A stretch of DNA of 64,000 nt from positions 496,001 to 560,000 of the forward strand of contig NIVC01000176.1 in assembly GCA_002269645.1 (NCBI GenBank), read 5' to 3'. This DNA is from Macrostomum lignano. Lineage: Eukaryota. Under the pieces are notes generated by a model. That model was not told the DNA's origin. It was given only the letters and a program-made list of their open reading frames with translations, and made no database searches. Position numbers and translations under genes: made by a program. Shown in pieces: positions 1 to 59,205 of the stretch; positions within the stretch are counted from its first letter, which is position 1; each line of letters begins with the position of its first letter.

Positions 1-702
1 CGTTTAACTGTCACCGCCAAAACTGAAACAAATTAGACAGAAAATTGAATAATTTAAGACAAATTAATGATTCTCTGAATTATAATCGTTTATATTAGAT
101 TAGAATTTTTCACAAACGAGAGTAGGGCGGTCACAGCTGATAATATATATCTATATATAGTTCGGTCACATCACGCTACTCATAGGAACAGATGTTAAGG
201 AGCACAGAATTCGCGAAAAGAAATTTTCTTATTTTGCTTTGGAGCTGTAAAATTTACAATTTACATGCAAATCCTTCTGTCTTAAAAGTAGCCACATGTA
301 TCTACAGTGGTGCAGCTTGAGAAATTGAACATCTACTACTTACATATTATCCATTTAGTAGCCTATAGTGTTAATAAATACGAATGAAATACTATTAGAA
401 AAAACAGCACAGAATAAAATTCGCATTGCCAAGAGGAAAAAAATCATACTTGAATTTCAAGCGGTGCGCGAAACCTCGGCGGCTGCGAATAACCGGATGA
501 CGAAAACAAAACATTTTGCAGAGAGAACAGCCTGCATCAGATTGCGGAATTAACAAATGAAGGAGCGAAAATGAAAATTTGCAGCGCTGATTCTGCTTAA
601 AATTTCTCGATGAAAAATAATATTGATGAAACAGGTTGTGAATTTCACTCTGGGTTTCTATTGGATAATATTGTAATCAGATTAATTAGCACACGCAAAC
701 GC

Positions 703-1876
703 TGACGATCTGGGATGCTGGCCCAGCAACTGAGGATCTGGGAGGCTGGCCCAGGAACTGAGGATCTGGGAGTGGCCCAGTCACTGAAGATTCTGGAGGC
801 TGGCCCAGCAACTGAGGATCTGAAAGGCTGGCCCAGGAACTGAGGATCTGGGAGGCTGGCCCAGCAACTGAGGATCTGGGAGGCTGGCCCAGCAACTGAG
901 GATCTGGGCGGCTGGCCCAGCAACTGAGGATCTGGGATGCTGGCCCAGCAACTGAGGATCTGGGATGCTGGCCCAGCAACTGAGGATCTGGGATGCTGGC
1001 TCAGAGACTCAGGATCTGGGATGCTGGCCCAGCAACTGAGGATCTGGGAGGCTGACCCAGCAACTGAGGATCTGGGATGCTGGCTCAGAGACTCAGGATC
1101 TGGGATGCTGGACCAGCAACTGAGGATCTGGGAGGCTGGCCCAGCAACTGAGGATCTGGGAGGCTGGCCCAGGAACTGAGGATCTGGGAGTGGCCCAGTC
1201 ACTGAAGATTCTGGAGGCTGGCCCAGCAACTGAGGATCTGAAAGGCTGGCCCAGGAACTGAGGATCTGGGAGGCTGGCCCAGCAACTGAGGATCTGGGAG
1301 GCTGGCCCAGCAACTGAGGATCTGGGCGGCTGGCCCAGCAACTGAGGATCTGGGATGCTGGCCCAGCAACTGAGGATCTGGGATGCTGGCCCAGCAACTG
1401 AGGATCTGGGATGCTGGCTCAGAGACTCAGGATCTGGGATGCTGGCCCAGCAACTGAGGATCTGGGATGCTGGACCAGCAACTGAGGATCTGGGATGCTG
1501 GCCCAGCAACTGAGGATCTGGGAGGCTGGCCCAGCAACTGAGGATCTGAAAGGCTGGCCCAGGAACTGAGGATCTGGGATGCTGGCCCAGCAACTGAGGA
1601 TCTGGGATGCTGGACCAGCAACTGAGGATCTGGGATGCTGGCCCAGCAACTGAGGATCTGGGAGGCTGGCCCAGCAACTGAGGATCTGGGATGCTGGACC
1701 AGCAACTGAGGATCTGGGATGCTGGCCCAGCAACTGAGGATCTGGGATGCTGGCCCAGCAACTGAGGATCTGGGAGGCTGGCTCAGCAACTGAGGATCTG
1801 GGAGGCTGGCTCAGCAACTGAGGATCTGGGAGGCTGGCCCAGCAACTGAGGATCTAGGAGGCTGGCCCAGCAACTG
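703..1876. repeat. 28-bp minisatellite (GCTGGCCCAGCAACTGAGGATCTGGGAG) with ~420-bp higher-order block
   Basis: Tandem copies are directly visible. The variant block GTGGCCCAGTCACTGAAGATTCTGGAG recurs at ~770 and ~1190. Confidence 0.97.
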
Positions 1877-3159
1877 CCAGGTATGTCCAAACTCAACAAC
1901 CGCAGCATATGATTAAAGTAGTGACGCAGCATAATCACAGAATGGAATCAACAAATCCCCATAAACTGGTACAAAGAAGACAAAAAACAGTGACCAACGA
2001 AACTGAAGGAAAACAACAGAGCAGCGCCCAGACCAAAAAAACAAAAAAGCATCCAGCTGAAGCAGGTAGAAAAGGCCGCAAAAATTAAAAAGTTTCAAGC
2101 CACGGCACAGGTCTACAAATTTCAGGCTGTTATTTAAAAACAACAGAACGAGCAAACGCTTTGACAAAAAATAAAACACACTTCGTAAAACATAAGGCTT
2201 TAATACTTGGATAAGAAGGGAAGTATCTTGTTGAACTACTCAAGGACAACTCAACTAGAAGGACAGGAAGGTAAGTTTCTTCTGCCTTATAGCTCTATTG
2301 ATATTAATAAAGCTTTTTGTTCAGAAAATTAGGATTCTATATATGTTAGTTTTTTATTCTACGTACAATTGCATGTCCTGTGCCTAAAAACCATTGGTTT
2401 TATGAATCTATTTTTTCATTCTTAGCTGACTGTAACAATATGTGCAACAGAGATGATCAAATTGATGCATAAAACCAAAAGCAGGCATGTGCGTAGAATA
2501 ATAAATAAACAAAGAGTCCTTATTTTCTGAACAAACAGCTTTGAAAGGCCAAACATACCAAAAGATGCTCACTGGGTCTGCCTCCTATCAAAAGCAATAA
2601 CGATTTTAATCTGAAAAAATGACAGTTCTTATCTCTGTAGTATATTTTTCGGCAAAAACCAGCCTCCTTAACACTTTCGTGGTTTACCCGTCCTTCTATT
2701 TTAATAGTTGCAGTCCTTGAGTTTTATAGATTTGAAAAAAATAGCTTAACAAGCTTACAAAAATAGCATCAGAGCAAAACAAAGCATTAAATTATTGTAT
2801 GAATGCTAAAACAAATAAATACGCTGGGATACTCCTGACAGACAGGTTACAGACGGTGGTTTTCCAAGATATTCAAACAAAAGAGTTATCAAACATGTCG
2901 AAAAACAATCCAAGCAAATGGAATTTCTTACAAGCTTAACAGCAGACAGCATTAGGAATAAGAACACTGCGAAGGCATGTTGAGTTTAAAGACAACTGCC
3001 TGTGTCTACTGCTGAAACATCGAACCACTCATTTTCTACGGCCTTAATCTAAAAAAATTATTGAATAATCAAAATGATAAATTCAGTACCTGTTTAAGCG
3101 CAGCACATATTGACTATGGAAGCCCGGTAGCACTGCTCACATTTGTCTATATGACAGGA

Positions 3160-3808
3160 GGGGCCCAGCAACTGAGGATCTGGGAGGCTGGCCCAGCACC
3201 TGAGGATCTGGGAGGCTGGCTCAGCAACTGAGGATCTGGGAGGCTGGCCCAGCAACTGGGGATCTGGGAGGCTGGCTCAGCAACTGAGGATCTGGGAGGC
3301 TGGCTCAGCAACTGGGGATCTGGGAGGCTGGCCCAGCACCTGAGGATCTGGGAGGCTGGCTCAGCAACTGAGGATCTGGGAGGCTGGCCCAGCACCTGAG
3401 GATCTGGGAGGCTGGCTCAGCAACTGAGGATCTGGGAGGCTGGCCCAGCAACTGGGGATCTGGGAGGCTGGCTCAGCAACTGAGGATCTGGGAGGCTGGC
3501 TCAGCAACTGGGGATCTGGGAGGCTGGCCCAGCACCTGAGGATCTGGGAGGCTGGCTCAGCAACTGAGGATCTGGGAGGCTGGCCCAGCAACTGGGGATC
3601 TGGGAGGCTGGCTCAGCAACTGAGGATCTGGGAGGCTGGCTCAGCAACTGGGGATCTGGGAGGCTGGCCCAGCAACTGGGGATCTGGGAGGCTGGCTCAG
3701 CAACTGAGGATCTGGGACGCTGGCCCAACAACTGAGGATCTGGGAGGGTGGCCCAGCAACTGAGGATCTGGGAGGCTGGCCCAGCAACTGAGGATCTGGG
3801 AGGCTGCC
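3160..3808. repeat. Second array of the same 28-bp minisatellite family
   Basis: Same monomer as 703-1876, with CTCAGCAACTGAG, CCCAGCACCTGAG and CTGGGGATC variants. Confidence 0.97.
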
Positions 3809-3975
3809 TAGCACCGTCTGGGAAGGGCGGCAGTGGCCCAGTCTGATCTCGAGTATCTAACCATAATAATGAGAAATGAAAAGTGCTACAAAGCCTGGCT
3901 AATTGAAGCATGGATCTGACGATGTGATAGCAATAAAAACCAGCAATCCCTGTCCTCATCATGACTACCCGACAT

Positions 3976-6900
3976 TCACGGCCCCTTCTTCGGCCCACTA
4001 GCACTGAACTTAACCAGCAGCCGTCGGGAGCCAACCGCCTGGCCGTTCAGCGCCATCATGGCCCGCCTGGCGTCCTCCTGGCTGCGCATGTTGACAAAAG
4101 CGCAGCAGGACTGCCTGAGCAGCCTGGCCGATACGACGCTGCCGTGACGGGCGAAAGCGGCGCACAGCTGCTCTTCGCTGACGTCAGGCATGACGTTGCC
4201 AACCCACAGAGCGGTGATTTTCATTTCTGTTTGTTGCTGCTCCTGCTGCGGTTGCTGCTCGGTCGGAGAATGAGAGTTATAGTTATTTTTCTGCTGAGCT
4301 AGCGGCTGCTGATGATGCTGCAGCTGCGGCTTGCTCTGCCCGATGGCTTGAGCATAGGAAGATTTAGCTGCAGCTGTGTACGATTGAGCCGCTGATGATG
4401 GACGGGCCTGCAGAGGGCGAGGCGATGAAAGAATGGAGCATTTTGAACCAATCGGACATATTGAGTGACCGCAAGTGAAGGTGATCTTCACAAACTATAG
4501 AATCTTCACAAACTATAGAATCTTCACAAACTATACAATCTTCACAAACTATACAATCTTAACAAACTATAGAATCTTCACAAACTATACAATCTCCACA
4601 AGCTATATAAAATTTCTACAAACTATAGAATATACACAAACTATACAATCTTCACAAACTACAGAATCTTCACAAACTATACAATCTTCACAAACTATAG
4701 AATCTTAACAAACTATAGAATCTTCACAAACTATAGAATCTTCACAAACTATACAATCTTCACAAACTATACAATCTTCACAAACTATAGAATCTTTACA
4801 AACTATAGAATCTTCACAAACTATAGGATCTTCACAAACTATAGAATCTTCAAAAACTATAGAATCTTCACAAACTATAGGATCTTCACAAACTATAGAA
4901 TCTTCACAAACTATAGAATCTTCACAAACTATAGAATCTTCACAAACTATTGAATCTTCACAAACTATTGAATCTTCACAAACTGTACAATCTTCACAAA
5001 CTATTGAATCTTCACAAACTATACAATCTTCACAAACTATACAATCTTCACAAACTATACAATCTTCACAAACTATAGAATCTTCACAAACATCATAATC
5101 TTCACAAACTATACAGTCTTAACAAACTATACAATTTTCACAAACTATGGAATCTTCACAAACTATAGAATCTTCACAAAGTATAGAATCTTCACAAAGT
5201 ATAGGATCTTCACAAACTATAGGATCTTCACAAAGTATAGAATCTTCACAAACTATGGAATCTTAACAAACTATATAGAATCTTTACAAACTATAGGATC
5301 TTCACAAACTATACAATCTTCACAAACTATAGAATCTTTACAAACTATACAATCTTCACAAACTATAGGATCTTCACAAACTATAGAATCTTCAAAAACT
5401 ATACAATCTTCACAAACTATTGAATCTTCACAAACTATTGAATCTTCACAAACTGTACAATCTTCACAAACTATACAATCTTCACAAACTATACAATCTT
5501 CACAGACTATGGAATCTTCACAGACGATACAATCTTCACAAACTATAAAATCTTCACAAACTATAGGATCTTCACAAACTATACAATCTTCACAAACTAT
5601 ACAATCTTCACAAACTATAGAATCTTTACAAACTATACAATCTTCACAAACTATAGGATCTTCACAAACTATAGAATCTTCAAAAACTATACAATCTTCA
5701 CAAACTATTGAATCTTCACAAACTATTGAATCTTCACAAACTGTACAATCTTCACAAACTATACAATCTTCACAAACTATACAATCTTCACAGACTATGG
5801 AATCTTCACAGACGATACAATCTTCACAAACTATAAAATCTTCACAAACTATAGGATCTTCACAAACTATAGAATCTTCACAAACTATAGAATCTTCACA
5901 AACTATACAATCTTCACAAACTATTGAATCTTCACAAACTATTGAATCTTCACAAACTGTACAATCTTCACAAACTATACAATCTTCACAAACTATACAA
6001 TCTTCACAGACTATGGAATCTTCACAGACGATACAATCTTCACAAACTATAAAATCTTCACAAACTATAGGATCTTCACAAACTATAGAATCTTCACAAA
6101 CTATAGAATCTTCACAAACTATACAATCTTCACAAACTATACAATCTTCACAGACTATGGAATCTTCACAGACGATACAATCTTCACAAACTATAAAATC
6201 TTCACAAACTATAGGATCTTCACAAACTATAGAATCTTCACAAACTATAGAATCTTCACAAACTATACAATCTTCACAAACTATTGAATCTTCACAAACT
6301 GTACAATCTTCACAAACTATACAATCTTCACAAACTATACAATCTTCACAGACTATGGAATCTTCACAGACGATACAATTTTCACAAACTATAAAATCTT
6401 CACAAACTATAGGATCTTCACAAACTATAGAATCTTCACAAACTATAGAATCTTCACAAACTATACAATCTTCACAAACTATACAATCTTCACAGACTAT
6501 GGAATCTTCACAGACGATACAATCTTCACAAACTATAAAATCTTCACAAACTATAGGATCTTCACAAACTATAGAATCTTCACAAACTATAGAATCTTCA
6601 CAAACTATACAATCTTCACAAACTATAGGATCTTCACAAACTATAGGATCTTCACAAACTATACAATTTTCACAGACGATACAAGCTCCAGCAACTTTAG
6701 AAGCCTCACCTGCTGGGAAACAGCTGGCACGGCGGTCCGAGGCTGTACATTCCCGTGAGGCGAGGCGGCGGTGGCCACCGTCATCAGCCAGTCAGCGGCC
6801 AGCTGCATGTTGCCATTATTTCTATTCAAAGCTTCCTCGCACCGAGCGGCTGTAAAACCCATGGACTCTAACTGAAGTTTTTTGGCTTCGTTCAGCTTAG

Positions 6901-9900
6901 CGGCCGCGTCTGAACTGTTCGGGTCGATCGCCAGCACGTGAGCAAAGCTGGCGCAGGCCTCGGCCGGCTGCTCCAAGCGCAGCTGGGCCAGGCCGCGCAT
7001 GTAGAATCCGCGGGCGTAGACAGGGCTGAGGCGGACGGCCTCGTTGGCGTCTGTTAGGCATTCCTGGAATTTGTCAGTTTAGCGGATTGCCTCTAACCTT
7101 CAGGTGCTTCAGTGGGTTGTCTGCCTCTAACCTTCAGATGCTTCAGTGGGTTGTCTGCCTCTAACCCTCAGGTGCTTCAGTGGGTTGCCTCTAACCTTCA
7201 GGTGCTTCAGTGGGTTGTCTGCCTCTAACCCTCAGGTGCTTCAGTGGGTTGTTTGCCTCTAACCTTCAGATGCTTCAGTGGGTTGTCTGCCTCTAACCTT
7301 CAGGTGCTTCAGTGGGTTGTCTGCCTCTAACCCTCAGGTGCTTCAGTGGGTTGCCTCTAACCTTTAGGTGCTTCAGTGGGTTGTCTGCCTCTAACCCTCA
7401 GGTGCTTCAGTGGGTTGTTTGCCTCTAACCTTCAGATGCTTCAGTGGGTTGTCTGCCTCTAACCTTCAGGTGCTTCAGTGGGTTGTCTGCCTCTAACCCT
7501 CAGGTGCTTCAGTGGGTTGTCTGCCTCTAACCTTCAGATGCTTCAGTGGGTTGTCTGCCTCTAACCCTCAGGTGCTTCAGTGGGTTGTCTGCCTCTAACC
7601 CTCAGGTGCTTCAGTGGGTTGCCTCTAACCTTCAGGTGCTTCAGTGGGTTGCCTCTAACCCTCAGGTGCTTCAGCGGGTTGCCTCTAACCCTCAGGTGCT
7701 TCAGTGGGTTGCCTCTAACTCTCAGGTGCTTCAGCGGGTTGCCTCTAACCCTCAGGTGCTTCAGTGGGTTGCCTCTAACCCTCAGGTGCTTAAGCGGGTC
7801 CCTCTAGCTTTCAGGGCCTTGAATAGGTTGCCTCTAACTCACAGGTACTTGAGTGAATTGTTTTTAACCCTCAGGTGCTTCAGTGGTTTACAATTCCAAT
7901 TTTTCAGATATTGAATTCAATCCAGTTCTAAGAAATGCCACTGCATTGTTGATTAGCAGTGTACCAACTAACCCGAAATCTGTCCAACTGATACAAACAG
8001 GCGGCCCTGCTGCCATAGTAGCGACAGTCGGTGGGATTCAAACTAATAGCATTGCAATATAACTGCAGGGCCCTGTTTAGCTCGCAAGCAGCCATGCACG
8101 CATTAGCAGCTTTAGCTAGTTCACGGGATGTGGCTATGGGCTCTACTGTAGGGTTAGCAATTGGCTGCTGTTGCTGCTGCTGCTGTTGCTGCTGCTGCTG
8201 TTGTTGCTGCTGCTGCTGCTGAAGCAGATGAATTTGCCGCGGTCGGGGCTTCGGTTTCGGCGGCTCAGACGACTCAGATGCGAAAGCTAACGACTGGGGA
8301 ACAATCGGCTGCAACTGCTGCTGCTGCTGATGATGATGTTGATAAAGATGCTGACGATGAAGCTGGTTAGACAATTGATTGACAGCTTGTACACTATCAA
8401 CAGGATATATTGGCTGTTGCTGCTGCTGTAGCGGCTGCTTGTCATAAATAGTGGATAGCGACCCACCGGATTTTATACCAGACACGACAAATGCGCTGTT
8501 TGAGTCGAAATTTTCCTAAAGAATTTAAAAAGTAGATCGAGAACGAAATTGATTTGTTATTCAACCTTTTTTTCGACTACTATTAGTAGGGTATTACAAA
8601 AGTTCAAAATTTATTATTTTCATTAATATACGACAAAAAGCTCGTCTCTTATATAGCTACTTAGAGTAGATAAAGTAGCATGTGTAAATAGGTTGAAAAA
8701 AGTTTCAAGTTCCAAATTTGAACAATTGCGCACTAACCTCTTCTATATTTCCATCTGTATTGTTTTCACCGTGGTCTGCAGATCCGTTTGAACTGCCAGC
8801 TTCGTGAGATAAGCCACCGTTTCCATGGTGACCACCGCTGCCATTCGCATTAGCAAAAGACGATTGCAGCTCAAGATTTTGCTTTTTGCGCAGCTTTTTT
8901 TCTCTCTTTTTTCGCTTTTTTTCATCTCGTTTAAGCTGCTGCTCCTTTCTCTGCTCCTCGGCCTCAATCAGCTCGTTGGCATTCTTTTCTGCTTCCTGCG
9001 GACCGGCGCATTGGGGTGCGAGAGTGAGCGGAGAGGCAGATTCTCAAGCACTGAGGGAATGGGGAGGCAGATTCTCAAGCACTGAGGGAATGGAGAGGCA
9101 GATTCTCAAGCACTGAGGGAGAGCGGAGAGGCAGATTCTCAAGCACTGAGGGAGAGCGGAGAGGCAGATTCTCAAGCACTGAGGGAGAGCGGAGAGGCAG
9201 ATTCTCAAGCACTGAGGGAATGGGGAGGCAGATTCTCAAGCACTGAGGGAATGGAGAGGCAGATTCTCAAGCACTGAGGGAATGGGAGAGGCAGATTCTC
9301 AAGCACTGAGGGAATGGGGAGGCAGATTCTCAAGCACTGAGGGAATGGAGAGGCAGATTCTCAAGCACTGAGGGAATGGGAGAGGCAGATTCTCAAGCAC
9401 TGAGGGAGAGCGGAGAGGCAGATTCTCAAGCACTGAGGGAGAGCGGAGAGGCAGATTCTCAAGCACTGAGGGAGAGCGGAGAGGCAGATTCTCAAGCACT
9501 GAGTGAGCGGAGAGGCAGATTCTCAAGCACTGAGGGAATGGGGAGGCAGATTCTCAAGCACTGAGGGAATGGAGAGGCAGATTCTCAAGCACTGAGGGAA
9601 TGGGAGAGGCAGATTCTCAAGCACTGAGGGAATGGAGAGGCAGATTCTCAAGCACTGAGGGAATGGAGAGGCAGATTCTCAAGCACTGAGGGAATGGGAG
9701 AGGCAGATTCTCAAGCACTGAGGGAATGGGAGCGGCAGATTCTCAAGCACTGAGTGAGCGGAGAGGCAGATTCTCAAGCACTGAGGGAGAGCGGAGAGGC
9801 AGATTCTCAAGCACTGAGGGAGAGCGAAGAGGCAGATTCTCAAGCACTGAGTGAGAGCGGAAAGGCAGATTCTCAAGCACTGAGGGAATGGGAGAGGCAG

Positions 9901-12900
9901 ATTCTCAAGCACTGAGGGTGTAGGAACGCATTCTAAAGCAGAAACTCAGCCAAATCAAGGGCAAAGGTGGTAAAACCAGTTTACCTCAGCAGTTCTTATC
10001 ACTTTTTCTCTATTATGATATGTCGGACTGCGATGGTCATTGGACTCCGATGACTGGGACGCAGCGCCATGACCATTTAGCTGCCATGGACGATGGTAGT
10101 CTGATGGGGAATGAGAAAGTTGAGCAAATAGTTTGTAGAAAGCCCAATTTCTAAATTGGAAATAAAGGAAATCATATATTAATTAAAAACTTCTTTTCAA
10201 TCACTTACCATAATCATCATCGTCACTTGTATCGGAGTCAGATGGAACTGCAACAATGCCAGTTAGATAAATGTCAACAAGTATGTATTTAATTCAATAC
10301 TAATGCATTAAATTTTAACAAGCATATGCTCGTAAACTTACCATCTTCATCAAATAGAGCACTGAACAGGTACCACATAAACATGGGATCCTTAAACTTT
10401 TCATCCAAATCTTTCACCTCCTGTTCTGTACCTGTTAGCTTTTTGAAAGCCAATGTCAGTAGCCGAAATTTCTACAAAGAAATAAGAGAAAAAATAGCAA
10501 AAAGTCAATGTTTACATTATCAATACAATTATACAAGTCTGTGAATTTCAACTTACAGAGGCAACAATCTCCAATTCAGACTGATTGAGTCTTTCAGGAT
10601 GCAACTGGATAGCCTGGTTTTTATAAGCAGCCTTAATATCTGCTGGAGTTAGCAATGCATCTAAAAGTTGTTTAGAGATATTATTATTAACATGACCAAG
10701 CCAAACATACAAATAAGCCTACAAAGTTAGCAACAATTACATACATGCGCAACCTTGGGAATCACCCGGCCGTTTCTATTGGCAACACACACATGTAAGT
10801 CGCTATTGGCTGAGAGCAGTCACGCGACTATTATTCTGTCCAATAGCGACTAACATGTGTGTGTTGCCAATAGAAACGGCCGAGTGAATCCCAAGGTTGC
10901 GCCCAAGCATGGCAACAAATACCAACTGATTAAGACTCCAGAATTTGTTATTGTATTAAACAACAAAATTTATATGCTCAATACACAAGAATAATGGCAA
11001 AAATGGCCAATTTTAGGTCTTAGGCCATTGACTTTTTACCTTGTTATTTCAGATAAGCCATGAAAAAACTAAATACAATTGGACCCAATAGGACAATTTT
11101 GCAACAATTTAAATGAACCTTGGAGTGGCAATGTAAATGCTACCATAGATAAATGACAAACTTAAATGATTTATCTAGGCCCATTGCCATATTGCATGGT
11201 TTTCTAGTTTTATTTTAACAAAATTGAATTCTAGTTCTATTTTAACAAAAGTGAATTCTGGTTCTATTTTAACAATGGCACATTTTTTTCAATAGGATAA
11301 AAATTTTTGTATGTATACAACTAGTGCATTCAATTTTATTATTGTCATGGGAGAGGGTAGGATAGTGGGTGCAATGGTAATAAATTCTTTTTTATCTAGT
11401 TGACACAAAATACTATATTAGACAAATTCATTTTATTGAAACTAATATTCTATTTTGTTAGCACTAATGATTGGATAACTATTAAAGCCAGAGACAGCTA
11501 ATTGTCATTGATAAGTTTTTAGGTTATCTACTAGCAATCTTCGCCGATGGGGGACATCTGGATAGAATCCTTGTTCTTTACAAATAAAGACTCCAAGACA
11601 AATAACAAATAGACAGCAAAATAAAGCTTTTATAAAAAAGCAACAGACATTCCCTCTAAAAACAAAACATCCCAAGACAGCAAGCATCCCCAGACAGCAT
11701 TCAAGCATCGATCCCCAAATAGCAAGCATCCCCCAGATAGCAAGCATACCCCCAATAGCAAGCATTCCCCAGACCCCCAATAGCAAGCATTCCCCAGACC
11801 CCAGATAGCAAGCATCCTCAGATAGCAAGCATCCCCCAAATAGCAAGCATTCCCCAGACCGCAAGCAACCCCAGATAGCAAGCATAACCTGGACACAAAG
11901 AGACCTTATAGATATCTAGCAACCCACTCTCAGATAGCAAGTACCCTCCACCCCCCAAGAGCAAGCATCTCCCAATAGCAAGTTACCCCAGTAGCAAGCA
12001 TTCTTCCAATAGCAAGCATCCCCCCAATAGCAAGCATCTCTTAGATAGCAAGCATCCCCCTGATAGCAAGTATCCATCCTTAAATAGCAAACATCCACCA
12101 GAGAACAAGTAGCTAGTGCAATAAGTTCCTTAGCTTAATAGTGGCTCCATTTTGTTTGGCATGACACTTCCTTTTATGTTTTAAACGGTTGTTCTTCTAT
12201 GTTTGAAATGGTGTCTCTTCTATGTTTGACATGGTGGCTCTTTTGTGTTTGACATGATAGCTCTTTAATGTTTGACATGGTGGCTCTTCTATGTTTGACA
12301 TGGGTTCTTTAATATTGACATGGTGGCTCTTCTATGTTTGCCATGGCGGCCCTTTTACATTTAAAATGGTATCTCTGTTATTTTTGACCTGGTGGCTCAG
12401 TTGTCTGACATGGTGGCTCTTTAATGTTTGACATGGAGTCACATATATGTTTGACTTGGTGGCTCTTATATGTTTTACATGGTGGCCCTTTACTGTTTGA
12501 CATCGTGGCTCTTTAACATTTGACATGGAGGCACGTAAATGTTTGTCATGGTGGCTTTTTTATGTTTGACATGGTGGCTCTTTTATGTTTGGCATGGTGG
12601 CTTTTTAATGTTTGGCATGGTGGCTCTTTTATGTTTGACATGGTGGCTCTTTTATGTTCGACATGGTGGCTCTTTCATGTTTTGCATGGTGGCCTTTATT
12701 GTTTGACATGGTGGCTTTTTAATGTTTGACATGGAGGCCCTTTGATGTTTGGCATGGTGGCTCTATAATGTTCGACATTATGGCTCTTTTATGTTTTGCA
12801 TGGTGGCTCTTTTATGTTTGGCATGGTGGCTCTTTAATGTTTGGCATGGTGGCTCTTTAATGTTTGACATGGTGGCTTTTTTGTTTGACATGGTGGCTCT

Positions 12901-15433
12901 TTTATGTTTGACATGGTGGCTCTTTCATATTTTGCATAGTGGCTCTTTAATGTTTGGCACTTTGGCATGGTGGCTCTTTTATGTTTAGCATGGTGGCTCT
13001 TTTATGTCTGACATGGTGGCTCTTTTATGTTTGATATGGTGGCTCTTTTATTTTTGACATGATGGCTCTTTTATATTTGACATGGTGACTCTATGTCTGA
13101 CATGGTGCCACTTTTATGTTTGACATGGTGCCATTTTTGATGTTTGACATTTTGCTTGTTTTATGTTTAGCATTTTGTGTTTTAAGGTGTTTTTAAAAAA
13201 ATGATTTTGCACTACTAAGATTTGAACCCAGGTCACTACATTAGTAGCCTAGTCTATTCACATCTAGGCTATCTCATTTCAATAAGAGTTTGGCTTTGGC
13301 TTTTGCCAAAAAAATTTGGCTTGACCTTTGCAAAAAAGCATGTTTTTTTTAATATTTAATCCCTTTAACATTGAGCAATTTCTTAGCCAGGATGCATGTA
13401 CCATCCAAGGAAAATTTCTGATCGAATGGTGCAAGTTTGAAGAAAATTGGTTGAGCTAATTTTTCTAAAATCTATCGCATACCCACAGACAACTCATTCT
13501 TAGTATATAGGATAGGACTATTTTATCATATCAATAAATTGACATAAGACTTAAACAAAATTTGAGTTGAATTTTAGCTGATCATATTCTTAAAAATTTT
13601 AAGATCCCAAAATTCCCAACCTTTAAAATAGGAGTAGAGAATAGGTTGTTTGATTCAAAATTTGTAGAATGAATCATTACTTGACTATATTTTGTTTTAA
13701 CTTATATTTGTTACATAATTACCCTATTTATTATTAGCTTATCACAATCAATCAATATTTATATATTTCAATTTTAATAGCTGATATTTTTGTCTATATC
13801 ATTGTATATCTCTTCTCTACAACTCTATATAGACCTACAAACTGTAGCACATTGAAAGATCTGATCCCAATTTTAAACCTACAAAAAAAGTATTCCCAAA
13901 CCTGCCCAATCACTTTAATCTTATCTACCTCTAGCACTTACTAATAGTATTGGGCAGGTTTGTTCCTAGTTATCAATGTGTCATTGTAGAAATTAAAAAA
14001 CAATTTTGGTTCCAAGAAAAATAACTTCTGGCATCTGTTTCAAAAGTAACTATTGGTACTTCGGTACTTCTATTAGTATTACTAATCCTTTCTAGTTTTA
14101 AAGAACTGCCAATTAAAAGTATTTAAATAAATATTTCATTGTTTAAGCTTGTTGTTAAGCCAGGATATATTTGTTTGAATGTCTTTTTGCATTAGTTGGG
14201 TTATGCAAAATAATTTATAAGCAGAAGAAACAATAATGCATAAAAAATACTTTGTGGATCCTCATAGAAAATTTAATTGCACACTCTTAATTTTGGCATC
14301 ACAAGGTTAAGTTCATAGCTTATCAAAGCCTAAGTTAGTTAATCTTTTTTATATTTCACCAGAGCTATCATTCTATAACCTTATTCAAGTAAATACCAAT
14401 AATTCTTTTATTCATGATTTTATAATTTTTTAATTATGCAAATAACTTAAAAAGCAAAAACCATATAATTTATAATTTATTTTTTAATAATTCTTTTTTA
14501 AAGTTTTGTTTTTTATGGATATATTCAGTGCTAAATTGGCAGTTAAGCACCTAACCTAAGTTTTCTTTCTCAATTACTGGATATTACTATCTGGTTCCTA
14601 GTCATTTTGTCATCTGGGTGTCTGGGGTGCTCACCTCGACTATGGTCACTTCGTCATCTTAATTACCATGCACTAACTGAAGAGAGTCATTTTGTCATCC
14701 ACCAATAATATTAGTGAATTATTGTGGCAATTAAATATATTTACTTGGAATCCTAATGATCCCAATCATTTTGTCATCTTGATTGATAAAACCTGTCAAT
14801 AGATTGGTTCTGCTTGCCGTAGCTTTTAGTTATTAAACAAAAAATAGTGTTAGTTTACACTAACTCAAATCATGCATAGATTAATTGGTTGATGACAAAG
14901 TATCCAGTATAACTAAATATTTGGTCACTTTGTCATATTATTTTTCAAGCTTCTTTGCTTCTGGTCACTTTGTCATCCGATATGATGAAATGGAATATGA
15001 CGATCTGACCAGTGACCTACTGTGTGTATTAGACTTATCAAAAATTAATTTTCATTACCTAAGTGACTGCTAATGCTAAGTCTGGCATTCTAAAAAATGA
15101 ACCAAAAAGTGCCACTTAAAGAAATAGTAACTTCTGGTACTAAAAGTGCCAGAAGTGCTAAAACTTTGCCCAACACTTCCCACTGGCCACCACTCCATGC
15201 AGTGGCAGATCCAGGATTTTTAAGTTGGGGCGGTGGGGGGGGGGGCAGATTGGCCCAACTTTTTAGGCTGGCCAAAAATAAGCTCCAAATAAGATTAAAA
15301 TTACAATACTCCCCCCTCATATGGCATATGCAAGTTTAGCCACGGCACAAGAGGGGATGGTTTAAGAAAACTTACTTGGATCAAGCTTTAATATTTCTAA
15401 AGCTTTAGCTTTCGAATGAACCATTTGTGTCAT
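3976..15433 (-). CDS. TTC31-like multidomain protein (~677 aa): N-terminal J-like domain (HPE), acidic tract, coiled coil, polyQ, 3 TPRs, UBA, C-terminal RRM
   Basis: Hand-spliced exons, all GT-AG and phase-compatible: 15433-15376, 10660-10557, 10471-10342, 10247-10209, 10100-9985, 8995-8738, 8515-7973, 7063-6710, 4407-3976 (2034 nt, stop TGA at 3978-3976). Recognisable motifs: ALEILKLDPNALLTPADIKAAYKNQAIQLHPER...SKFRLLTLAFKKL (DnaJ-like); EAEKNANELIEAEEQRK...KKRKKREKK and ENFDSNSAFV (TTC31-like); NAISLNPTDCRYYGSRAAC...ARGFYMRGLA (TPR); LESMGFTAARCEEALNRNNGNMQLAADWL (UBA); LWVGNV...CAFVNM...LNGQAVGSRRLLVKF (RRM). Confidence 0.85.
4485..6680. repeat. 18-bp minisatellite (TCTTCACAAACTATAGAA) filling intron 8 of the TTC31-like gene
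   Basis: About 120 tandem copies. Variant blocks (CAGACTATGG...CAGACGATAC) recur at multiples of 18 bp. Confidence 0.98.
7085..7885. repeat. 30/34-bp minisatellite (CTCTAACCTTCAGGTGCTTCAGTGGGTTG[TCTG]C) in intron 7
   Basis: Direct tandem copies. 34-bp units dominate on the left and 30-bp units on the right. Confidence 0.97.
9022..9917. repeat. 31-33-bp minisatellite (GGAGAGGCAGATTCTCAAGCACTGAGGGAAT) in intron 5
   Basis: Direct tandem copies with an invariant core GCAGATTCTCAAGCACTGAG. Confidence 0.97.
10747..10892. mobile_element. 146-bp near-perfect palindrome (MITE-like/foldback)
   Basis: Arms of ~63 bp (GCGCAACCTTGGGAATCACCCGGCCGTTTCTATTGGCAACACACACATGTAAGTCGCTATTGG versus the reverse complement of 10830-10892) with 3 mismatches. 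No clear TSD. Confidence 0.75.
11665..12100. repeat. Degenerate ~18-20-bp minisatellite (AGATAGCAAGCATCCCC)
   Basis: Recurrent TAGCAAGCAT core in intron 1 of the TTC31-like gene. Confidence 0.9.
12200..13150. repeat. Degenerate ~23-bp minisatellite (TGTTTGACATGGTGGCTCTTTTA)
   Basis: Recurrent GACATGGTGGCTCTT core. Confidence 0.92.
13210..13515. mobile_element. Possible tRNA-like SINE head (minus strand, ~13215-13275) next to a non-autonomous Helitron/Helentron-like tail
   Basis: The minus strand reads TAGCCTAGATGTG...GGGTTCAAATC (A/B-box-like). The plus strand ends ...CGCATACCCACAGACAACTCATTCTTAGTATATAG, which resembles HINE/Lep1-type ends. Pattern resemblance only. Confidence 0.3.
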
Positions 15434-16575: not shown

Positions 16576-19500
16576 ATGGTCGTACGAATGAATCTGTAAG
16601 CCTTCTTATCCTTTAATTAAAAAACATTTATTCATTAAGTTGAAAATACATATTTCGAAAAAAAACTTGTTGATTAATTTGATGCTTTTTTAAGGATGAG
16701 TCTCGAAATTATTCAACAGCAACAGCAGCCTCACATCCAGCAGGCCTCCGAGCAGCTCCAGACACTGGCTAGACCCCATCGGGGCTGGCCGCCAGTGCTG
16801 GACTGTCAGGCGTGGGGTGGAAGGTCCGTTGGCCACGGACACGAAAGCTGGAATTCCGGCCCCTCTGCTGGGGTTGACCCTGGTGGACCTGGTGGCAGGC
16901 TCACCGACATGCCCTCTGCACACTCACGCGGCGACGCGGTGGTGCAAGGCCCCTGTCCTATGGTGAGCGGGGCATTGACGGCTGGCTGTGCCATGTTGCA
17001 GTCAGACCGTTCCCGTAGGCCCATTGACCAGGTGACCCAGCGGGGCCGGCATCAACAACAACAACAACAGCAACAGCAGCGGGCGCGTGGACAGCAGATG
17101 ACCCACAGCAGCAGGAACATCTGCGAGCATTGAATACGGTATGGGTTAATTATAACAGTTTATTATATTGTTTAAATCTTCGGTTATAAGTTATTGCATA
17201 CATAATCACTGCGAATACCACTGTTAAAACACATTCAAAACGGTAGCTACTTTTTGAGTAGAGAACGAGGAATGCAGGATAGCTACTCACTGGTTAGAAG
17301 AGAACAGGGAATGCAGGATAGCTACTCACTGGTTAGAAGAGAACAGGGAATGCAGGATAGCTACTCACTGGTTAGAAGAGAACAGGGAATGCAGGATAGC
17401 TACTCACTGGTTAGAAGAGAACAGGGAATGCAGGATAGCTACTCACTGGTTAGAAGAGAACAGGGAATGCAGGATAGCTACTCACTGGTTAGAAGAGAAC
17501 AGGGAATGCAGGATAGCTACTCACTGGTTAGAAGAGAACAGGGAATGCAGGATAGCTACTCACTGGTTAGAAGAGAACAGGGAATGCAGGATAGCTACTC
17601 ACTGGTTAGAAGAGAACAGGGAATGCAGGATAGCTACTCACTGGTTAGAAGAGAACAGGGAATGCAGGATAGCTACTCACTGGTTAGAAGAGAACAGGGA
17701 ATGCAGGATAGCTACTCACTGGTTAGAAGAGAACAGGGAATGCAGGATAGCTACTCACTGGTGGTAGAAAACAGGGAATGCAGGATAGCTACTCACTGGT
17801 TAGAAGAGAACAGGGAATGCAGGATAGCTACTCACTGGTTAGAAGAGAACAGGGAATGCAGGATAGCTACTCACTGGTGGTAGAGAACAGGGAATGCAGG
17901 ATAGCTACTCACTGGTGGTACAGAACATGGAATGCAGGATAGCTACTCACTAGTGCAGTAGAGAACCGGGAATGCGGGATAGCTACTCACTGGTTAGAAG
18001 AGAACAGGGAATGCAGGATAGCTACTCACTAGTGCAGTAGAGAACCGGGAATGCAGGATAGCTACTCATTGGTGGTAGAGAACAGGGAATGCAGGATAGC
18101 TACTCACTGGTGGTAGATAACAGGGAATGCAGGATAGCTACTCACTGGTGGTAGAGAACATGGAATGCAGGATAGCTACTCACTGGTGGTAGAGAACATG
18201 GAATGCAGGATAGCTACTCACTGGTGGTAGAGAACATGGAATGCAGGATAGCTACTCACTGGTGGTAGAGAACAGGGAATGCAGGATAGCTACTCACTGG
18301 TGGTAGAGAACAGAGAATGCAGGATAGCTACTCACTGGTTAGAAGAGAACAGGGAATGCAGGATAGCTACTCACTGGCGTATCACTACTAGTGGGGGGTA
18401 TTTTGGGAAGATTCCCCTTGTCAGCACTAATCCTATTCATCTCGGTCAGATCCAGCGCCAGCAGGAAGAGCTGTCAGACTTGGCCAGCCAGTTGCGGAGA
18501 CGCGATGAAGAGCTCCGGCTGATTCGAGACTTGCGCACCCGAGAGGAGCCGGCCACGCCGGACGAGAGCCTCCGACTGCGCGACCTGCGCATCCGTCAGC
18601 TTGAGGAGGCCGCAGCCAAGGAGCGAGCGGAAGCGGCGAAACAGGTGAGCTCTCTTTGGCCACTCCAATCGGCCCTAATCCATTGGGTTCCTCGGACACC
18701 CAAATTTTTCCCCCTCGGACACCCGAATTCCTACCTCTCGGACACCTAAAATCCTCCTCTTTGACACCCAAATTCCTCCACTTCGGACACCCAAATTCCT
18801 CCCTCTCGGACACCCAAATTCCTCCTTTTTCGGACACCCAAATTCCTCCCCTTCGACACCCAAATTCCTCCCTCTCGGACACCCGAATTCCTCCCCTTCG
18901 ACACCCAAATTCCTCCTTTTTCGGACACCCAAATTCCTCCCCTTCGACACCCAAATTCCTCCCTCTCGGACACCCAAATTCCTCCTTTTTCGGACACCCA
19001 AATTCCTCCCCTTCGACACCCAAATTCCTCCCTCTCGGACACCCAAATTCCTCCCCTTCGACACCCAAATTCCTCCTTTTTCGGACACTCAAATTCCTCC
19101 CCTTCGACACCCAAATTCCTCCTTTTTCGGACACCCAAATTCCTCCCCTTCGACACCCAAATTCCTCCCTCTCGGACACCCAAATTCCTCCTTTTTCGGA
19201 CACCCAAATTCCTCCCCTTCGACACCCAAATTCCTCCCCTTCGGACACCCGAATTCCTCCCCTTCGACACCCAAATTCCTCCCCTTCGGACACCCGAATT
19301 CCTCCCCTTCGACACCCGAATTCCTCCCCTTCGACACCCAAATTCCTCCTTTTTCGGACACCCAAATTCCTCCCCTTCGACACCCAAATTCCTCCCTCTC
19401 GGACACCCAAATTCCTCCTTTTTCGGACACCCAAATTCCTCCCCTTCGACACCCAAATTCCTCCCCTTCGACACCCAAATTTCTCCCCTTCGACACCCAA

Positions 19501-48282: not shown

Positions 48283-49061
48283 AGGTCATGCTGGCTGCAG
48301 ATTAACAATGTATTCCAAAATAAAATCCCTTTAATTGAACAAATATTTCCCATACGAGCGTATGTGTTTTTCCGCTTTTGAGCCAGCGAAATCGTATCTC
48401 GCCCATCACCCCCCCCCACTGTTTCTCTTTTGATCGCGAGATCCGCATGCTATCAACAACTGTCATTTTCGCATGCTTCAGGCGAATCTTCTAGCGGCCA
48501 GTCTCTTTTATTATTTTTTGCCCGCAATCGTCTTCTGCTTGGCTGCTGCTGGCTGTATCCGGGGGACCGCGGGAGGGCTGCCTGTTCCGCTCGAACTCTC
48601 CTTTTTTGCGCGCCGAGTTCGACTGAGAAGCGAGTTGGGGGGGGGGGGGGGGCTAAACTCGGGGGCCGCCGGTTTGTGAAAACGTTGTCAGTTAAAGAAA
48701 ATCTTCGCTTTTTAGTCTGGCATGGAAACTGGCTTTGTGCCCGGATCCGTCATCCAGCACAAAGCGGAGCAGATTTATAGCAGCGCAGAGTTCGTGTCAA
48801 ATGTTGGCCTGCACCTGTCAATCACACACTGTGGATGGCCGGCTTGGGGTTGGTACAATTGATAATCCTTCATGTCTGTATTTTGCTCTGGCTAGCGGAT
48901 GGGCATCCCATGAGTGACTGATGGGCCACAGGCAGGCGAGATCAAATAACGTGAGATTCTATAATAAAATATGCGTAGAATAACCAAATTCCTATGCGTT
49001 AGGGAATCATTATAAGCCTGACTTTTAGTAACTAAACACTACTCTTCTACATGTAGGATTA

Positions 49062-58721: not shown

Positions 58722-59205
58722 TTTTACACATTCTACACATTCTACACATTCTATTGCACATTCTACACATTCTACTGCACATTCTACACATTCTACACAT
58801 TCTATTGCACATTCTACACATTCTACTGCACATTCTACAAATTCTACTGCACATTCTACACATTCTACTGCACATTCTACACATTCTACACATTCTACTG
58901 CACATTCTACACATTCTACTGCACATTCTACAGATTCTACACATTCTACAGCACATTCTGCTACACATTCTACACATTCTGCTACACATTCTACACATTA
59001 TGCTACACATTCTGCTACACATTCTGCTACACATTCTGCTACACATTCTGCTACACATTCTACACATTCTGCTACACATTCTACACATTCTGCTACACAT
59101 TCTGCTACACATTATGCTACACATTCTGCTACACATTCTGCTACACATTCTGCTACACATTCTGCTACACATTCTACACATTCTGCTACACATTCTACAT
59201 GCACA
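58722..59205. repeat. 9/12-bp repeat (TTCTACACA, TTCTACTGCACA, TTCTGCTACACA)
   Basis: Direct tandem copies. Confidence 0.96.

What the first reader, a model, noticed from the sequence alone, without database searches (positions are those of the whole stretch)
3976..15433. J-like domain + TPR clamp + UBA + RRM in one polypeptide (TTC31-like)
Seen: nine phase-compatible exons give MTQMVHSKAKALEILKLDPNALLTPADIKAAYKNQAIQLHPERLNQSELEIVASKFRLLTLAFKKL, then acidic and coiled-coil segments, polyQ, three TPRs, a UBA directly after the last TPR helix, and an RRM. The four J-domain and acidic exons are too small to be assembled by the ORF track, and exon 1 sits 4.7 kb away, so automated annotation could miss the J domain. 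Established: J domains and Hop/STI1-type TPRs recruit Hsp70/Hsp90, UBA binds ubiquitin, and RRMs bind RNA. The vertebrate TTC31 proteins I know carry the coiled-coil/TPR core and I do not recall a J or UBA domain. Inference: a single adaptor coupling chaperones, ubiquitinated clients and RNA, for example in ribosome or RNP quality control or in granules.
Basis: partly seen in the sequence, partly recalled or inferred. Interest (0 to 1): 0.75.

Follow-up and report, generated by a model that had tools for sequence, protein, structure and literature searches.

The report
Flatworm TTC31-like J–TPR–UBA–RRM gene
The region holds a real nine-exon flatworm (Macrostomum lignano) gene for a chaperone-adaptor-like protein with J, TPR, UBA and RRM domains; it belongs to a widespread animal family that is in the databases but has never been studied, and this copy is an eroded version of it.

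Summary
Pfam finds DnaJ, TPR, UBA and RRM_1. AlphaFold2 gives a four-helix J fold, and the TPR cap helix runs straight into the UBA. Two public M. lignano models cover the gene between them: PAA65154.1 spans exons 1-6 and A0A1I8ITA… spans exons 3-9. Only the second lacks the J domain.

The architecture is not new. At least 111 retrieved proteins, from sponge and cnidarians to echinoderms and a tunicate, share a collinear J, acidic, basic coiled-coil, TPR, UBA, RRM layout. Most add a C-terminal CCCH zinc finger. Most are called "uncharacterized"; some are named "TTC31".

This copy is a divergent member:
- It has HPE instead of HPD. HPE is common in the family and is reported as the only tolerated replacement.
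- Its TPR carboxylate clamp is degenerate (A369, N373, S404, R434, M438), although the family keeps N, N, K and R almost invariantly.
- No CCCH exon is present in the window.

It is most likely an adaptor linking Hsp70 to RNA-bound or ubiquitinated clients, with EEVD binding weakened here. The gene is ordinary, but the family is conserved and unstudied.

The parts
15376..15433 (-). Exon 1: start codon (15433-15431) and J-domain helix I (MTQMVHSKAKALEILKLDP, plus the first base of N20).
   Evidence: Identical to the N-terminus of GenBank PAA65154.1. Orthologues start at the same position.
10557..10660 (-). Exon 2: J-domain helix II, the HPE tripeptide (codons 10601-10593) and the start of helix III.
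   Evidence: The Pfam DnaJ match aa 13-70 spans the exon 1/2 and 2/3 junctions.
10342..10471 (-). Exon 3: J-domain helices III and IV, followed by a conserved hydrophobic helix (PMFMWYLFSALF, aa 83-95).
   Evidence: AF2 helices 46-67, 70-79 and 83-95 with pLDDT 85-90. Both P0016 and P0001 join this exon to exon 4.
10209..10247 (-). Exon 4: acidic Ser/Asp stretch (VPSDSDTSDDDDY).
   Evidence: Present in P0016 and P0001. An acidic stretch lies at the same place in orthologues.
9985..10100 (-). Exon 5: poorly conserved linker (DYHRPWQ…VIRTAE). It restores phase 0.
   Evidence: Present verbatim in P0016 and P0001.
8738..8995 (-). Exon 6: basic coiled coil, possibly an NLS (EAEEQRKEQQLKRDEKKRKKREKKLRKKQ), then a Gly/Ser/Asn-rich linker.
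   Evidence: E163, K171, E181, K183 and K187 are invariant across orthologues. The AF2 model has a helix from residue 148 to 175, where the modelled fragment ends.
7973..8515 (-). Exon 7: conserved FDSNSAF motif (8509-8489), Q-rich region with a Q19 run (8221-8165), TPR1 and TPR2 helix A. Clamp positions here are A369, N373 and S404.
6710..7063 (-). Exon 8: TPR2 helix B, TPR3 (clamp positions R434 and M438), a cap helix continuous with UBA helix 1, the MGF loop, and UBA helices 2 and 3.
   Evidence: AF2 pLDDT above 90 with helices 2-12, 17-29, 33-46, 51-67, 72-81 and 86-99. Pfam UBA and UBA_7 score above their cutoffs. phmmer hits the USP13, USP5 and Mud1 UBA domains. Foldseek neighbours are PP5, Sgt2, RPAP3, SPAG1 and CHIP.
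3976..4407 (-). Exon 9: Q-rich linker, RRM (aa 599-668; RNP2 LWVGNV, RNP1 CCAFVNM) and the stop codon at 3978-3976.
   Evidence: Pfam RRM_1 E=2.4e-12, and alignment with orthologue RRMs.

Best explanation
The locus is the Macrostomum lignano orthologue of a conserved, uncharacterized animal protein family that databases sometimes label 'TTC31' or 'TTC31-like'.

Shown here: a 677-aa protein with the following parts in order.
- An N-terminal J-domain fold carrying HPE in place of HPD.
- An acidic stretch.
- A basic coiled coil.
- A Q-rich linker.
- A three-repeat TPR domain of the Hsp70/Hsp90 co-chaperone type.
- A UBA domain fused to the TPR cap helix.
- A second Q-rich linker.
- One RRM.

Inferred mechanism for the family: a modular adaptor. 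The RRM (plus, in most species, a C-terminal CCCH finger) anchors it on RNA or RNPs. The J domain locally activates Hsp70. The TPR holds a chaperone C-terminal tail or a similar acidic peptide. The UBA reads ubiquitin on clients. This would amount to RNP-directed protein quality control or remodelling.

Inferred for this flatworm copy: the J domain probably still works, because HPE is the one replacement reported as tolerated and it is stably kept in many family members. EEVD-type peptide binding by the TPR is probably weakened or retargeted, because three of the five clamp positions are changed (one of them, A369, family-wide) and a fourth is a conservative K-to-R change. The zinc-finger RNA contact has probably been lost, so this copy relies on the RRM and UBA.
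For: - Gene model. Public partial models together link exons 1-9.
- Domains: Pfam. J fold by AF2, with Foldseek top hits all J domains at probability 0.95-1.0. phmmer hits DNAJB8, DNAJB2 and DnaJ J domains. TPR-UBA model. UBA matches to USP13, USP5 and Mud1. The closest TPR structures are SPAG1, STIP1, RPAP3, PP5 and SGT.
- Family: collinear alignment at 26-30% identity. Of 272 retrieved proteins, 111 carry J + TPR + RRM and 68 have every module including the zinc finger. Taxa run from the sponge Halichondria and Nematostella to echinoderms, hemichordates and the tunicate Phallusia. Orthologue J domains score 51-68 bits against Pfam DnaJ.
- HPE: the family has 35 HPD and 29 HPE members, and molluscs toggle only between D and E (with names). 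A review states that HPE is the only tolerated replacement (PMC13254874).
- Clamp: the alignment to human STIP1 TPR1 gives K8→A369, N12→N373, N43→S404, K73→R434 and R77→M438.
Against: - No experiment on any member of the family was found, and no retrieved paper links TTC31 to a J domain. The mechanism is therefore inferred from domain identities only.
- The DnaJ Pfam score is marginal for this protein (30.0 bits alone, 26.9 bits in context, cutoff 27.8). Helix II has fewer basic residues (YKNQAIQLHPE) than the family consensus (YKxLALKWHPxKH).
- Many family members, including all crustaceans and chelicerates sampled, have lost HPD or HPE completely, so Hsp70 activation cannot be the family's universal core function.
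- Even in orthologues the first clamp lysine is an invariant alanine, so EEVD binding is unproven for the family as well.
- Foldseek E-values are weak (0.02-0.4) because the domains are small.
- A CCCH exon beyond the window's start cannot be excluded.
Confidence: 0.55

Rival explanations
1. Chaperone-independent scaffold. In this flatworm copy, and perhaps in much of the family, the J-like and TPR modules are structural relics or have been re-used as protein-protein interaction surfaces. The protein would then act as an RNA- and ubiquitin-binding adaptor, for example in granules with its Q-rich linkers, without engaging Hsp70 or Hsp90.
For: - HPD is lost outright in roughly 40% of family members with a J-like domain.
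- In this protein the clamp is degenerate and helix II is less basic.
- The UBA and RRM score above their Pfam cutoffs.
- The protein is 11.7% Q and has a Q19 run.
Against: - The J fold is predicted with pLDDT around 90 and is retained from sponge to tunicate.
- In molluscs the tripeptide toggles only between HPD and HPE rather than drifting.
- HPE is reported as functional in E. coli DjlB and DjlC (PMC13254874).
- Clamp residues N43, K73 and R77 are 94-98% conserved elsewhere in the family, which argues for a real peptide-binding function of the TPR.
Confidence: 0.3
2. Nuclear RNA-processing J protein. The protein would work like DNAJC17/Cwc23, a J + RRM spliceosome-associated factor. The basic KKRKKREKK segment would serve as a nuclear localisation signal, and the J domain would be auxiliary.
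For: - A J domain plus a single RRM is the DNAJC17 layout (established knowledge).
- The basic coiled coil is conserved.
- DNAJC8 from a spliceosome structure is among the phmmer hits for the J region (7vpx_J).
Against: - No specific sequence similarity to DNAJC17 beyond the generic domains was seen.
- DNAJC17 has no TPR, UBA or CCCH finger.
- Localisation is untested.
Confidence: 0.12
3. Gene-model artefact. The J-domain exons (15433-10342) would belong to a separate upstream gene and would only appear to be phase-compatible with the TPR/UBA/RRM gene.
For: - Intron 1 is long (4.7 kb).
- Exons 1-5 lie in AT-rich sequence (GC 0.32-0.37) while exons 6-9 lie in sequence with GC 0.46-0.49.
- No RNA data were available here.
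Against: - PAA65154.1 runs from exon 1 into exon 6 and P0001 runs from exon 3 to exon 9, with a 97-aa overlap at 96% identity.
- Every full-length orthologue has the J domain at the N-terminus of the same polypeptide, in the same order.
Confidence: 0.03

Closest known systems
Invertebrate 'TTC31 / TTC31-like' proteins
   Same: Examples are XP_071947047 (Antedon), XP_064381949 (Halichondria), LOC116604176 (Nematostella), XP_011423573 (Magallana gigas) and entries named 'tetratricopeptide repeat protein 31' in Octopus, Nymphon and spiders. They are collinear with this protein over the whole length: J domain, acidic stretch, KKKRREKKK coiled coil, D-x-N-S-A-F motif, 3 TPRs, MGF-type UBA-like helices and an RRM with LWVGNV…CAFVNF.
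   Different: - This copy is only 26-30% identical to them, whereas they are about 50% identical to each other in the C-terminal half.
- It has long Q-rich inserts.
- It alone, together with its M. lignano duplicate model, has S at clamp position N43 and M at R77.
- It lacks the C-terminal CCCH finger within the window.
- Its UBA is more canonical than theirs; Pfam rarely flags theirs.
Vertebrate TTC31 (human Q49AM3, function unknown)
   Same: The published layout is 519 aa with an ordered N-terminus (residues 1-81), a coiled coil at 147-197 and three TPRs at 305-406 (PMC7279152). This matches the order and spacing of the first two thirds of the invertebrate proteins. NCBI transfers the name to invertebrate orthologues.
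   Different: Human TTC31 is described with a disordered C-terminus and no annotated UBA, RRM or zinc finger. No paper in the library links it to a J domain. No vertebrate sequence could be retrieved here, so no direct alignment was made.
DNAJC7 (TPR2/TTC2) and DNAJC3 (p58IPK)
   Same: They combine co-chaperone-type TPR repeats with a J domain in one polypeptide.
   Different: The order is reversed (TPRs N-terminal, J C-terminal), they have more TPRs, and they have no UBA or RRM. No specific similarity was found beyond the generic domains.
DNAJC17 / yeast Cwc23
   Same: An N-terminal J domain plus one RRM, which is the only classical J-protein layout that includes an RRM (established knowledge).
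   Different: It has no TPR, UBA or CCCH finger. It was not among the significant sequence hits.
Hop/STIP1, SGTA, RPAP3, SPAG1, PP5 and CHIP TPR domains
   Same: These are the best sequence and structure matches for the TPR: SPAG1 at 1.8e-20, STIP1 at 2.7e-18 and PP5 at 3e-14, with Foldseek probability 1.0. All have three repeats plus a cap helix.
   Different: The two-carboxylate clamp K8/N12/N43/K73/R77 reads A/N/S/R/M here. None of these proteins has the cap helix running into a UBA.

Membership tests
J domain (Pfam PF00226, DnaJ) | Profile score at or above the Pfam gathering threshold | tested here: met
   The score is 30.0 bits against a cutoff of 27.8 for aa 1-110 scanned alone, but only 26.9 bits when the whole protein is scanned, so this is borderline. 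Orthologues score 51-68 bits.
J domain (Pfam PF00226, DnaJ) | Four-helix J fold with a helix II - loop - helix III hairpin | tested here: met
   The AF2 model has helices 8-14, 25-38, 46-67 and 70-79, with pLDDT about 90. The top Foldseek PDB hits are all J domains at probability 0.95-1.0, although E-values are only 0.03-0.4.
J domain (Pfam PF00226, DnaJ) | His-Pro-Asp tripeptide in the helix II/III loop | tested here: not met
   The tripeptide is HPE at aa 40-42 (window 10601-10593). The family census gives HPD 35, HPE 29 and about 45 others. HPE is reported as the only tolerated replacement (PMC13254874).
J domain (Pfam PF00226, DnaJ) | Stimulates Hsp70 ATPase | not testable with these tools
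   This requires a biochemical assay.
Carboxylate-clamp TPR domain (Hop/CHIP/PP5 type) | Three TPRs plus a cap helix, with closest relatives among Hsp70/Hsp90 co-chaperones | tested here: met
   phmmer against the PDB gives SPAG1, STIP1, RPAP3, PP5 and SGT. Foldseek gives PP5, Sgt2, RPAP3, SPAG1 and CHIP.
Carboxylate-clamp TPR domain (Hop/CHIP/PP5 type) | Five clamp residues (K8, N12, N43, K73 and R77 of Hop TPR1) | tested here: not met
   The alignment to human STIP1 TPR1 gives A369, N373, S404, R434 and M438. Orthologues keep N12 (166/196), N43 (190/196), K73 (185/196) and R77 (192/196), but have Ala at the K8 position (186/196).
Carboxylate-clamp TPR domain (Hop/CHIP/PP5 type) | Binds the EEVD tail of Hsp70/Hsp90 | not testable with these tools
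   This requires peptide-binding assays.
UBA domain (PF00627 / PF22562) | Profile score above threshold, an MGF/MGY loop and a three-helix bundle | tested here: met
   UBA_7 scores 29.5 bits (cutoff 27) and UBA scores 26 bits (cutoff 22.4). The MGF loop is at aa 484-486. The AF2 model has three helices with pLDDT above 90. phmmer hits the USP13, USP14, USP5 and Mud1 UBA domains.
UBA domain (PF00627 / PF22562) | Binds ubiquitin | not testable with these tools
   This requires pull-down or NMR experiments.
RRM (PF00076) | Profile score above threshold | tested here: met
   RRM_1 scores 47 bits against a cutoff of 20.7, E=2.4e-12, aa 601-664.
RRM (PF00076) | Aromatic residues in RNP2 and RNP1 that stack on RNA | tested here: inconclusive
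   RNP2 is LWVGNV, with an aromatic W. RNP1 is CCAFVNM: the central F is kept, position 3 is Cys (as in the family's CAFVNF), and the last F is replaced by M in this copy.
Invertebrate TTC31-like J-TPR-UBA-RRM-CCCH family | Collinear full-length similarity with family-specific motifs (basic coiled coil, D-x-N-S-A-F, LWVGNV, CAFVN) | tested here: met
   Alignment A1 has 39 invariant columns spread over all modules. HMMs built from the family modules recover them in the model.
Invertebrate TTC31-like J-TPR-UBA-RRM-CCCH family | C-terminal C-x7-C-x5-C-x3-H zinc finger (GPVNGxECYFWRTTGC…) | tested here: not met
   The stop codon follows the RRM (…KFSASGPKKGP*). tblastn and a six-frame CCCH motif scan find no such exon on the minus strand in window 1-3975. 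An exon beyond the window edge is not excluded.
Vertebrate TTC31 | Direct sequence similarity to a vertebrate TTC31 protein | not tested
The link rests on the names NCBI gives to orthologues and on the published human layout (PMC7279152).

The most novel reading that the evidence does not exclude
The TTC31 family is an ancient, overlooked class of J-domain protein present across animals. It would deliver Hsp70 activity to RNA-bound, ubiquitin-marked clients through its RRM, CCCH finger, TPR and UBA. Vertebrate TTC31 would be its truncated descendant, with an N-terminus that is a cryptic or degenerate J domain and so missing from canonical lists of human J proteins. The repeated loss of HPD (arthropods), of the clamp and zinc finger (Macrostomum), and of the RNA modules (vertebrates) would then trace a stepwise dismantling of an ancestral quality-control machine for RNPs.
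Probability: 0.25. Interest if true: 0.6.

Novelty: new member of a known kind. Interest (0 to 1): 0.4.

Why it matters
For genome annotation, the full-length M. lignano protein is not represented by any single public model found here. One model is a 176-aa N-terminal fragment. The other is a frame-garbled 504-aa model without the J domain. The nine-exon model given here corrects both.

For biology, the gene points to a conserved animal family that combines four or five well-understood modules: Hsp70 activation, a co-chaperone TPR, ubiquitin binding and RNA binding. No functional study was found for it, and its vertebrate namesake TTC31 is also uncharacterized.

The natural variation found here gives ready-made separation-of-function alleles for testing what each module does:
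- HPD versus HPE versus a lost tripeptide.
- An intact versus a degenerate clamp.
- With versus without the zinc finger.

The flatworm gene itself is an ordinary, divergent orthologue.

Tried and rejected
I used P0001 instead.
- The first word-indexed homologue search with the full model was swamped by poly-Q and TPR words and gave only bacterial TPR proteins besides P0001.
- The profile search with alignment A1 had the same problem and was effectively wasted.
- A profile of the orthologues' C-terminal halves without the flatworm sequence worked.
- The look-up of encoding contigs for P0001 found nothing on record.
- I looked for a downstream CCCH zinc-finger exon with tblastn of orthologue C-termini, a six-frame motif scan and a listing of all open segments in window 1-4000 on the minus strand. 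There was nothing convincing; the only hit, 'WKTTVCNLSVR' at 2866-2834, has no Cys/His pattern.
- Alternative splice choices (a donor at 10432 for exon 3; an acceptor at 10150 for exon 5, which runs into a stop) were rejected. The chosen sites are the only phase-compatible set and match P0016 and P0001.
- Literature searches for TTC31 with J-domain, and for J-domain proteins with RRM, TPR and UBA, found no description of the family.
- No vertebrate TTC31 sequence could be retrieved, so that comparison stays indirect.
Full report
**1. What is in the sequence**

The window is eukaryotic, with short exons and introns packed with minisatellites. The gene lies on the minus strand. Reading that strand, I rebuilt nine exons, each with an AG acceptor and a GT donor and all phase-compatible: 15433-15376, 10660-10557, 10471-10342, 10247-10209, 10100-9985, 8995-8738, 8515-7973, 7063-6710 and 4407-3976.

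- The coding sequence is 2034 nt and encodes 677 aa with no internal stop.
- An in-frame stop lies 18 codons upstream of the ATG.
- Intron 1 is 4715 bp.
- The fifth exon (10100-9985) is needed to restore the reading frame between the acidic exon and the coiled-coil exon. The alternative acceptor at 10150 runs into a stop.

**2. Is the model real?**

The closest database protein identifies the organism as Macrostomum lignano. Two independent public models overlap and together link all nine exons.

- GenBank PAA65154.1 (P0016, 'BOX15_Mlig018795g4, partial', 176 aa) equals my model residues 1-176 apart from one residue. It therefore joins exons 1 to 6 with the same junctions.
- UniRef A0A1I8ITA… (P0001, 504 aa) starts inside exon 3 in another frame (MKSLRIP…). 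It then follows exons 3 to 9, with some frame-garbled stretches in exons 7 and 8.

No single public entry found here gives the full-length protein. tblastn of the model against the window finds only this one copy.

**3. Domains**

Pfam gives:

| Domain | Score (bits) | Cutoff (bits) | Residues |
|---|---|---|---|
| RRM_1 | 47 | 20.7 | 601-664 |
| TPR_2 | 36.9 | 27 | best stretch 433-465 |
| UBA_7 | 29.5 | 27 | 480-511 |
| UBA | 26 | 22.4 | 480-509 |
| DnaJ, N-terminal 110 aa alone | 30.0 | 27.8 | 13-70 |
| DnaJ, within the whole protein | 26.9 | 27.8 | 13-69 |

Further support:

- **J region.** phmmer against the PDB gives the J domains of DNAJB8, DNAJB2, DnaJ and Ydj1. An AlphaFold2 model of the 176-aa N-terminal fragment, built with 110 orthologues as the alignment, has helices at 8-14, 25-38, 46-67 and 70-79, plus an extra conserved hydrophobic helix at 83-95. 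pLDDT is about 90 over residues 11-90. Its best Foldseek matches in the PDB are all J domains at probability 0.95-1.0, although E-values are only 0.03-0.4 for so small a domain.
- **TPR-UBA region.** A model of exon 8 (pLDDT above 90) shows TPR2 helix B, TPR3 and a cap helix. The cap helix continues without a break into UBA helix 1, followed by the MGF loop and two more helices. This confirms 'a UBA directly after the last TPR helix'.
- **UBA segment alone.** It matches the UBA domains of USP13, USP14, USP5 and Mud1.
- **TPR neighbours.** The closest sequence and structure relatives are the Hsp70/Hsp90 co-chaperones SPAG1, STIP1, RPAP3, PP5, SGT and CHIP.

**4.

First, the J loop reads HPE (codons 10601-10593), not HPD.

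Second, the TPR 'clamp' is not intact. In HMMER's alignment to human STIP1 TPR1, which carries natural numbering, the five two-carboxylate-clamp residues map as follows:

| STIP1 TPR1 residue | This protein |
|---|---|
| K8 | A369 |
| N12 | N373 |
| N43 | S404 |
| K73 | R434 |
| R77 | M438 |

Only one residue is identical and one more is a conservative change. The other M. lignano model (P0001) carries the same S and M, so this is not an assembly error.

**5. The family**

An exhaustive HMMER search with P0001 found 402 proteins at E≤1e-10. The best non-flatworm hits are 500-700-aa proteins matched in one stretch from the coiled coil to the RRM. Their sequences and the alignment show the same order of modules:

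1. An N-terminal J domain.
2. An acidic stretch.
3. A KKKRREKKK coiled coil.
4. A D-x-N-S-A-F motif.
5. Three TPRs.
6. An MGF-type UBA-like segment.
7. An RRM (LWVGNV…CAFVNF).
8. In addition, a C-terminal C-x7-C-x5-C-x3-H zinc finger (GPVNGxECYFWRTTGC…).

A profile of the orthologues' C-terminal halves found 761 proteins at E≤1e-10. The 120 best are all invertebrate animals: molluscs, annelids, nemerteans, a brachiopod, a bryozoan, crustaceans, chelicerates, polyneopteran insects, echinoderms, hemichordates, cnidarians and a sponge. A tunicate member also exists (Phallusia).

Most are named 'uncharacterized protein'. Several are named 'tetratricopeptide repeat protein 31(-like)'. Others carry misleading names such as 'nucleolin-like', 'STIP1-like' or 'hsc70-interacting protein-like'. 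Many already carry precomputed Pfam DnaJ + TPR + RRM_1 hits.

Using HMMs built from each module of the alignment, 111 of the 272 retrieved proteins carry J + TPR + RRM, and 68 have every module including the zinc finger. Orthologue J domains score 51-68 bits against Pfam DnaJ.

**6. How this copy compares with its family (with names)**

The tripeptide across family members:

| Tripeptide | Count | Taxa |
|---|---|---|
| HPD | 35 | sponge, cnidarians, echinoderms, hemichordate, brachiopod, nemerteans, several bivalves |
| HPE | 29 | all sampled gastropods, a chiton, Mytilus, Ostrea, Saccostrea, Solemya, and this flatworm |
| Fully degenerate | remainder | crustaceans (SAS/SSS), chelicerates (YPE/FPE) and some others |

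Within molluscs the position toggles only between D and E, which suggests both are acceptable. A recent review states that HPE is the only replacement that seems to be tolerated, as in E. coli DjlB and DjlC (PMC13254874).

The TPR clamp positions N43, K73 and R77 are kept in 190, 185 and 192 of 196 family TPRs. Only the two M. lignano models have S and M. The K8 position is alanine in 186 of 196, so even the family clamp is a four-residue version.

No zinc-finger exon exists on the minus strand in the 3975 bp downstream of the stop. One beyond the window edge cannot be excluded.

The flatworm protein is only 26-30% identical to its orthologues, while those are about 50% identical to each other over the C-terminal half. 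It also carries long Q-rich inserts, including a Q19 run. By contrast its UBA is more canonical than that of most orthologues, where Pfam rarely detects one.

**7. Mechanism**

Shown: the domain identities, their order and their conservation.

Inferred for the family: the RRM and zinc finger place the protein on RNA or RNPs. The J domain activates Hsp70 there. The TPR binds an acidic C-terminal peptide such as the Hsp70/Hsp90 tail. The UBA reads ubiquitin. Together these would make an adaptor for RNP-linked protein quality control or remodelling. The conserved basic coiled coil may be a nuclear localisation signal or an RNA-binding surface.

Inferred for the M. lignano copy: the J function is probably retained (HPE), EEVD-type binding is weakened or retargeted, and the zinc-finger contact is lost.

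The main rival is that the chaperone modules are relics and the protein is a plain RNA/ubiquitin scaffold. The outright loss of HPD in arthropods shows that Hsp70 activation cannot be essential everywhere in the family. A nuclear, DNAJC17-like RNA-processing role is a further possibility. A gene-model artefact is very unlikely.

**8. Comparison with known proteins**

Human TTC31 is described as 519 aa with an ordered N-terminus (1-81), a coiled coil at 147-197, TPRs at 305-406 and a disordered C-terminus (PMC7279152). This matches the first two thirds of the invertebrate layout and suggests that vertebrates lost the UBA, RRM and zinc-finger part. I could not retrieve a vertebrate sequence to test this, or to test whether its N-terminus is J-like.

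No paper in the library links TTC31 to a J domain or describes a J + TPR + UBA + RRM protein. A large survey of J-protein architectures does not mention RRM at all (PMC10410713, occurrence counts). DNAJC7 and DNAJC3 combine TPRs and a J domain in the reverse order. DNAJC17 combines a J domain and an RRM without TPR or UBA.

**9. Verdict**

It is a divergent orthologue of a conserved animal family that is present in the databases but functionally unstudied, so the architecture itself is not new. In this copy the 'clamp' is degenerate and the J motif is HPE.

Interest is moderate. It comes from the unstudied family and its natural module-loss variants, not from the flatworm locus itself.

Noticed in passing
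window 35328-35753 (+): This open segment encodes the end of the RRM and the RD/RS-rich tail of U1 snRNP 70K (…[31 protein letters not shown]…RDRDRDR…). phmmer matches human U1-70K residues 157-280 at E=2e-22. A U1-70K gene therefore lies about 20 kb from the TTC31-like gene.
   Followed up: partly
window 4484-6674, 7087-7799, 9030-9918, 12171-13168 (introns of the gene); 3162-3813 and about 690-1950 (downstream of the stop codon): Most introns of the gene hold a long minisatellite: an 18-bp unit x121, 34-bp x22, 31-bp x28 and 23-bp x43. A 28-bp array lies downstream of the stop. These arrays create long spurious ORFs in several frames on both strands.
   Followed up: partly
window 18433-21183, 33948-34792, 49025-51220, 58479-59261: Further large tandem-repeat arrays give 'ORFs' of 260-916 aa in multiple overlapping frames on both strands. 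These are repeat artefacts, not genes.
   Followed up: no
window 24346-25935 (-): A 529-aa ATG-initiated ORF that is not repetitive. It contains a C2H2-like stretch (YPCGLCAENFLSKQELVQHF) but has no Pfam hit. It may be a single-exon gene of unknown function.
   Followed up: partly
model aa 238-244 (window 8509-8489) and aa 83-95 (window 10387-10349): There are two conserved family elements that I could not assign to any known domain. One is a D-x-N-S-A-F motif, with A243 and F244 invariant in 11 aligned sequences. The other is a hydrophobic helix just after J-domain helix IV (M..LF…F), predicted with pLDDT of about 85. By position the second resembles the inhibitory helix V of class B J proteins, but that was not tested.
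   Followed up: no
P0001 (UniRef A0A1I8ITA…) versus window exons 3, 7 and 8: The public 504-aa model contains out-of-frame segments (MKSLRIP at the start; KFRLKQRICRVWYKIRSSSSNNSSSS in exon 7; TPTRPSASALSTPAD in exon 8) that correspond to other reading frames of the same exons seen. I infer that it was predicted from an assembly with indel errors. It loses the J domain and part of TPR2.
   Followed up: partly
family alignment: Loss of the HPD/HPE tripeptide follows lineage: crustaceans have SAS/SSS and chelicerates have YPE/FPE. Even so, the TPR clamp residues, the RRM and the zinc finger stay conserved in those same proteins. The TPR and RNA-binding part therefore looks more constrained than Hsp70 activation.
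   Followed up: partly
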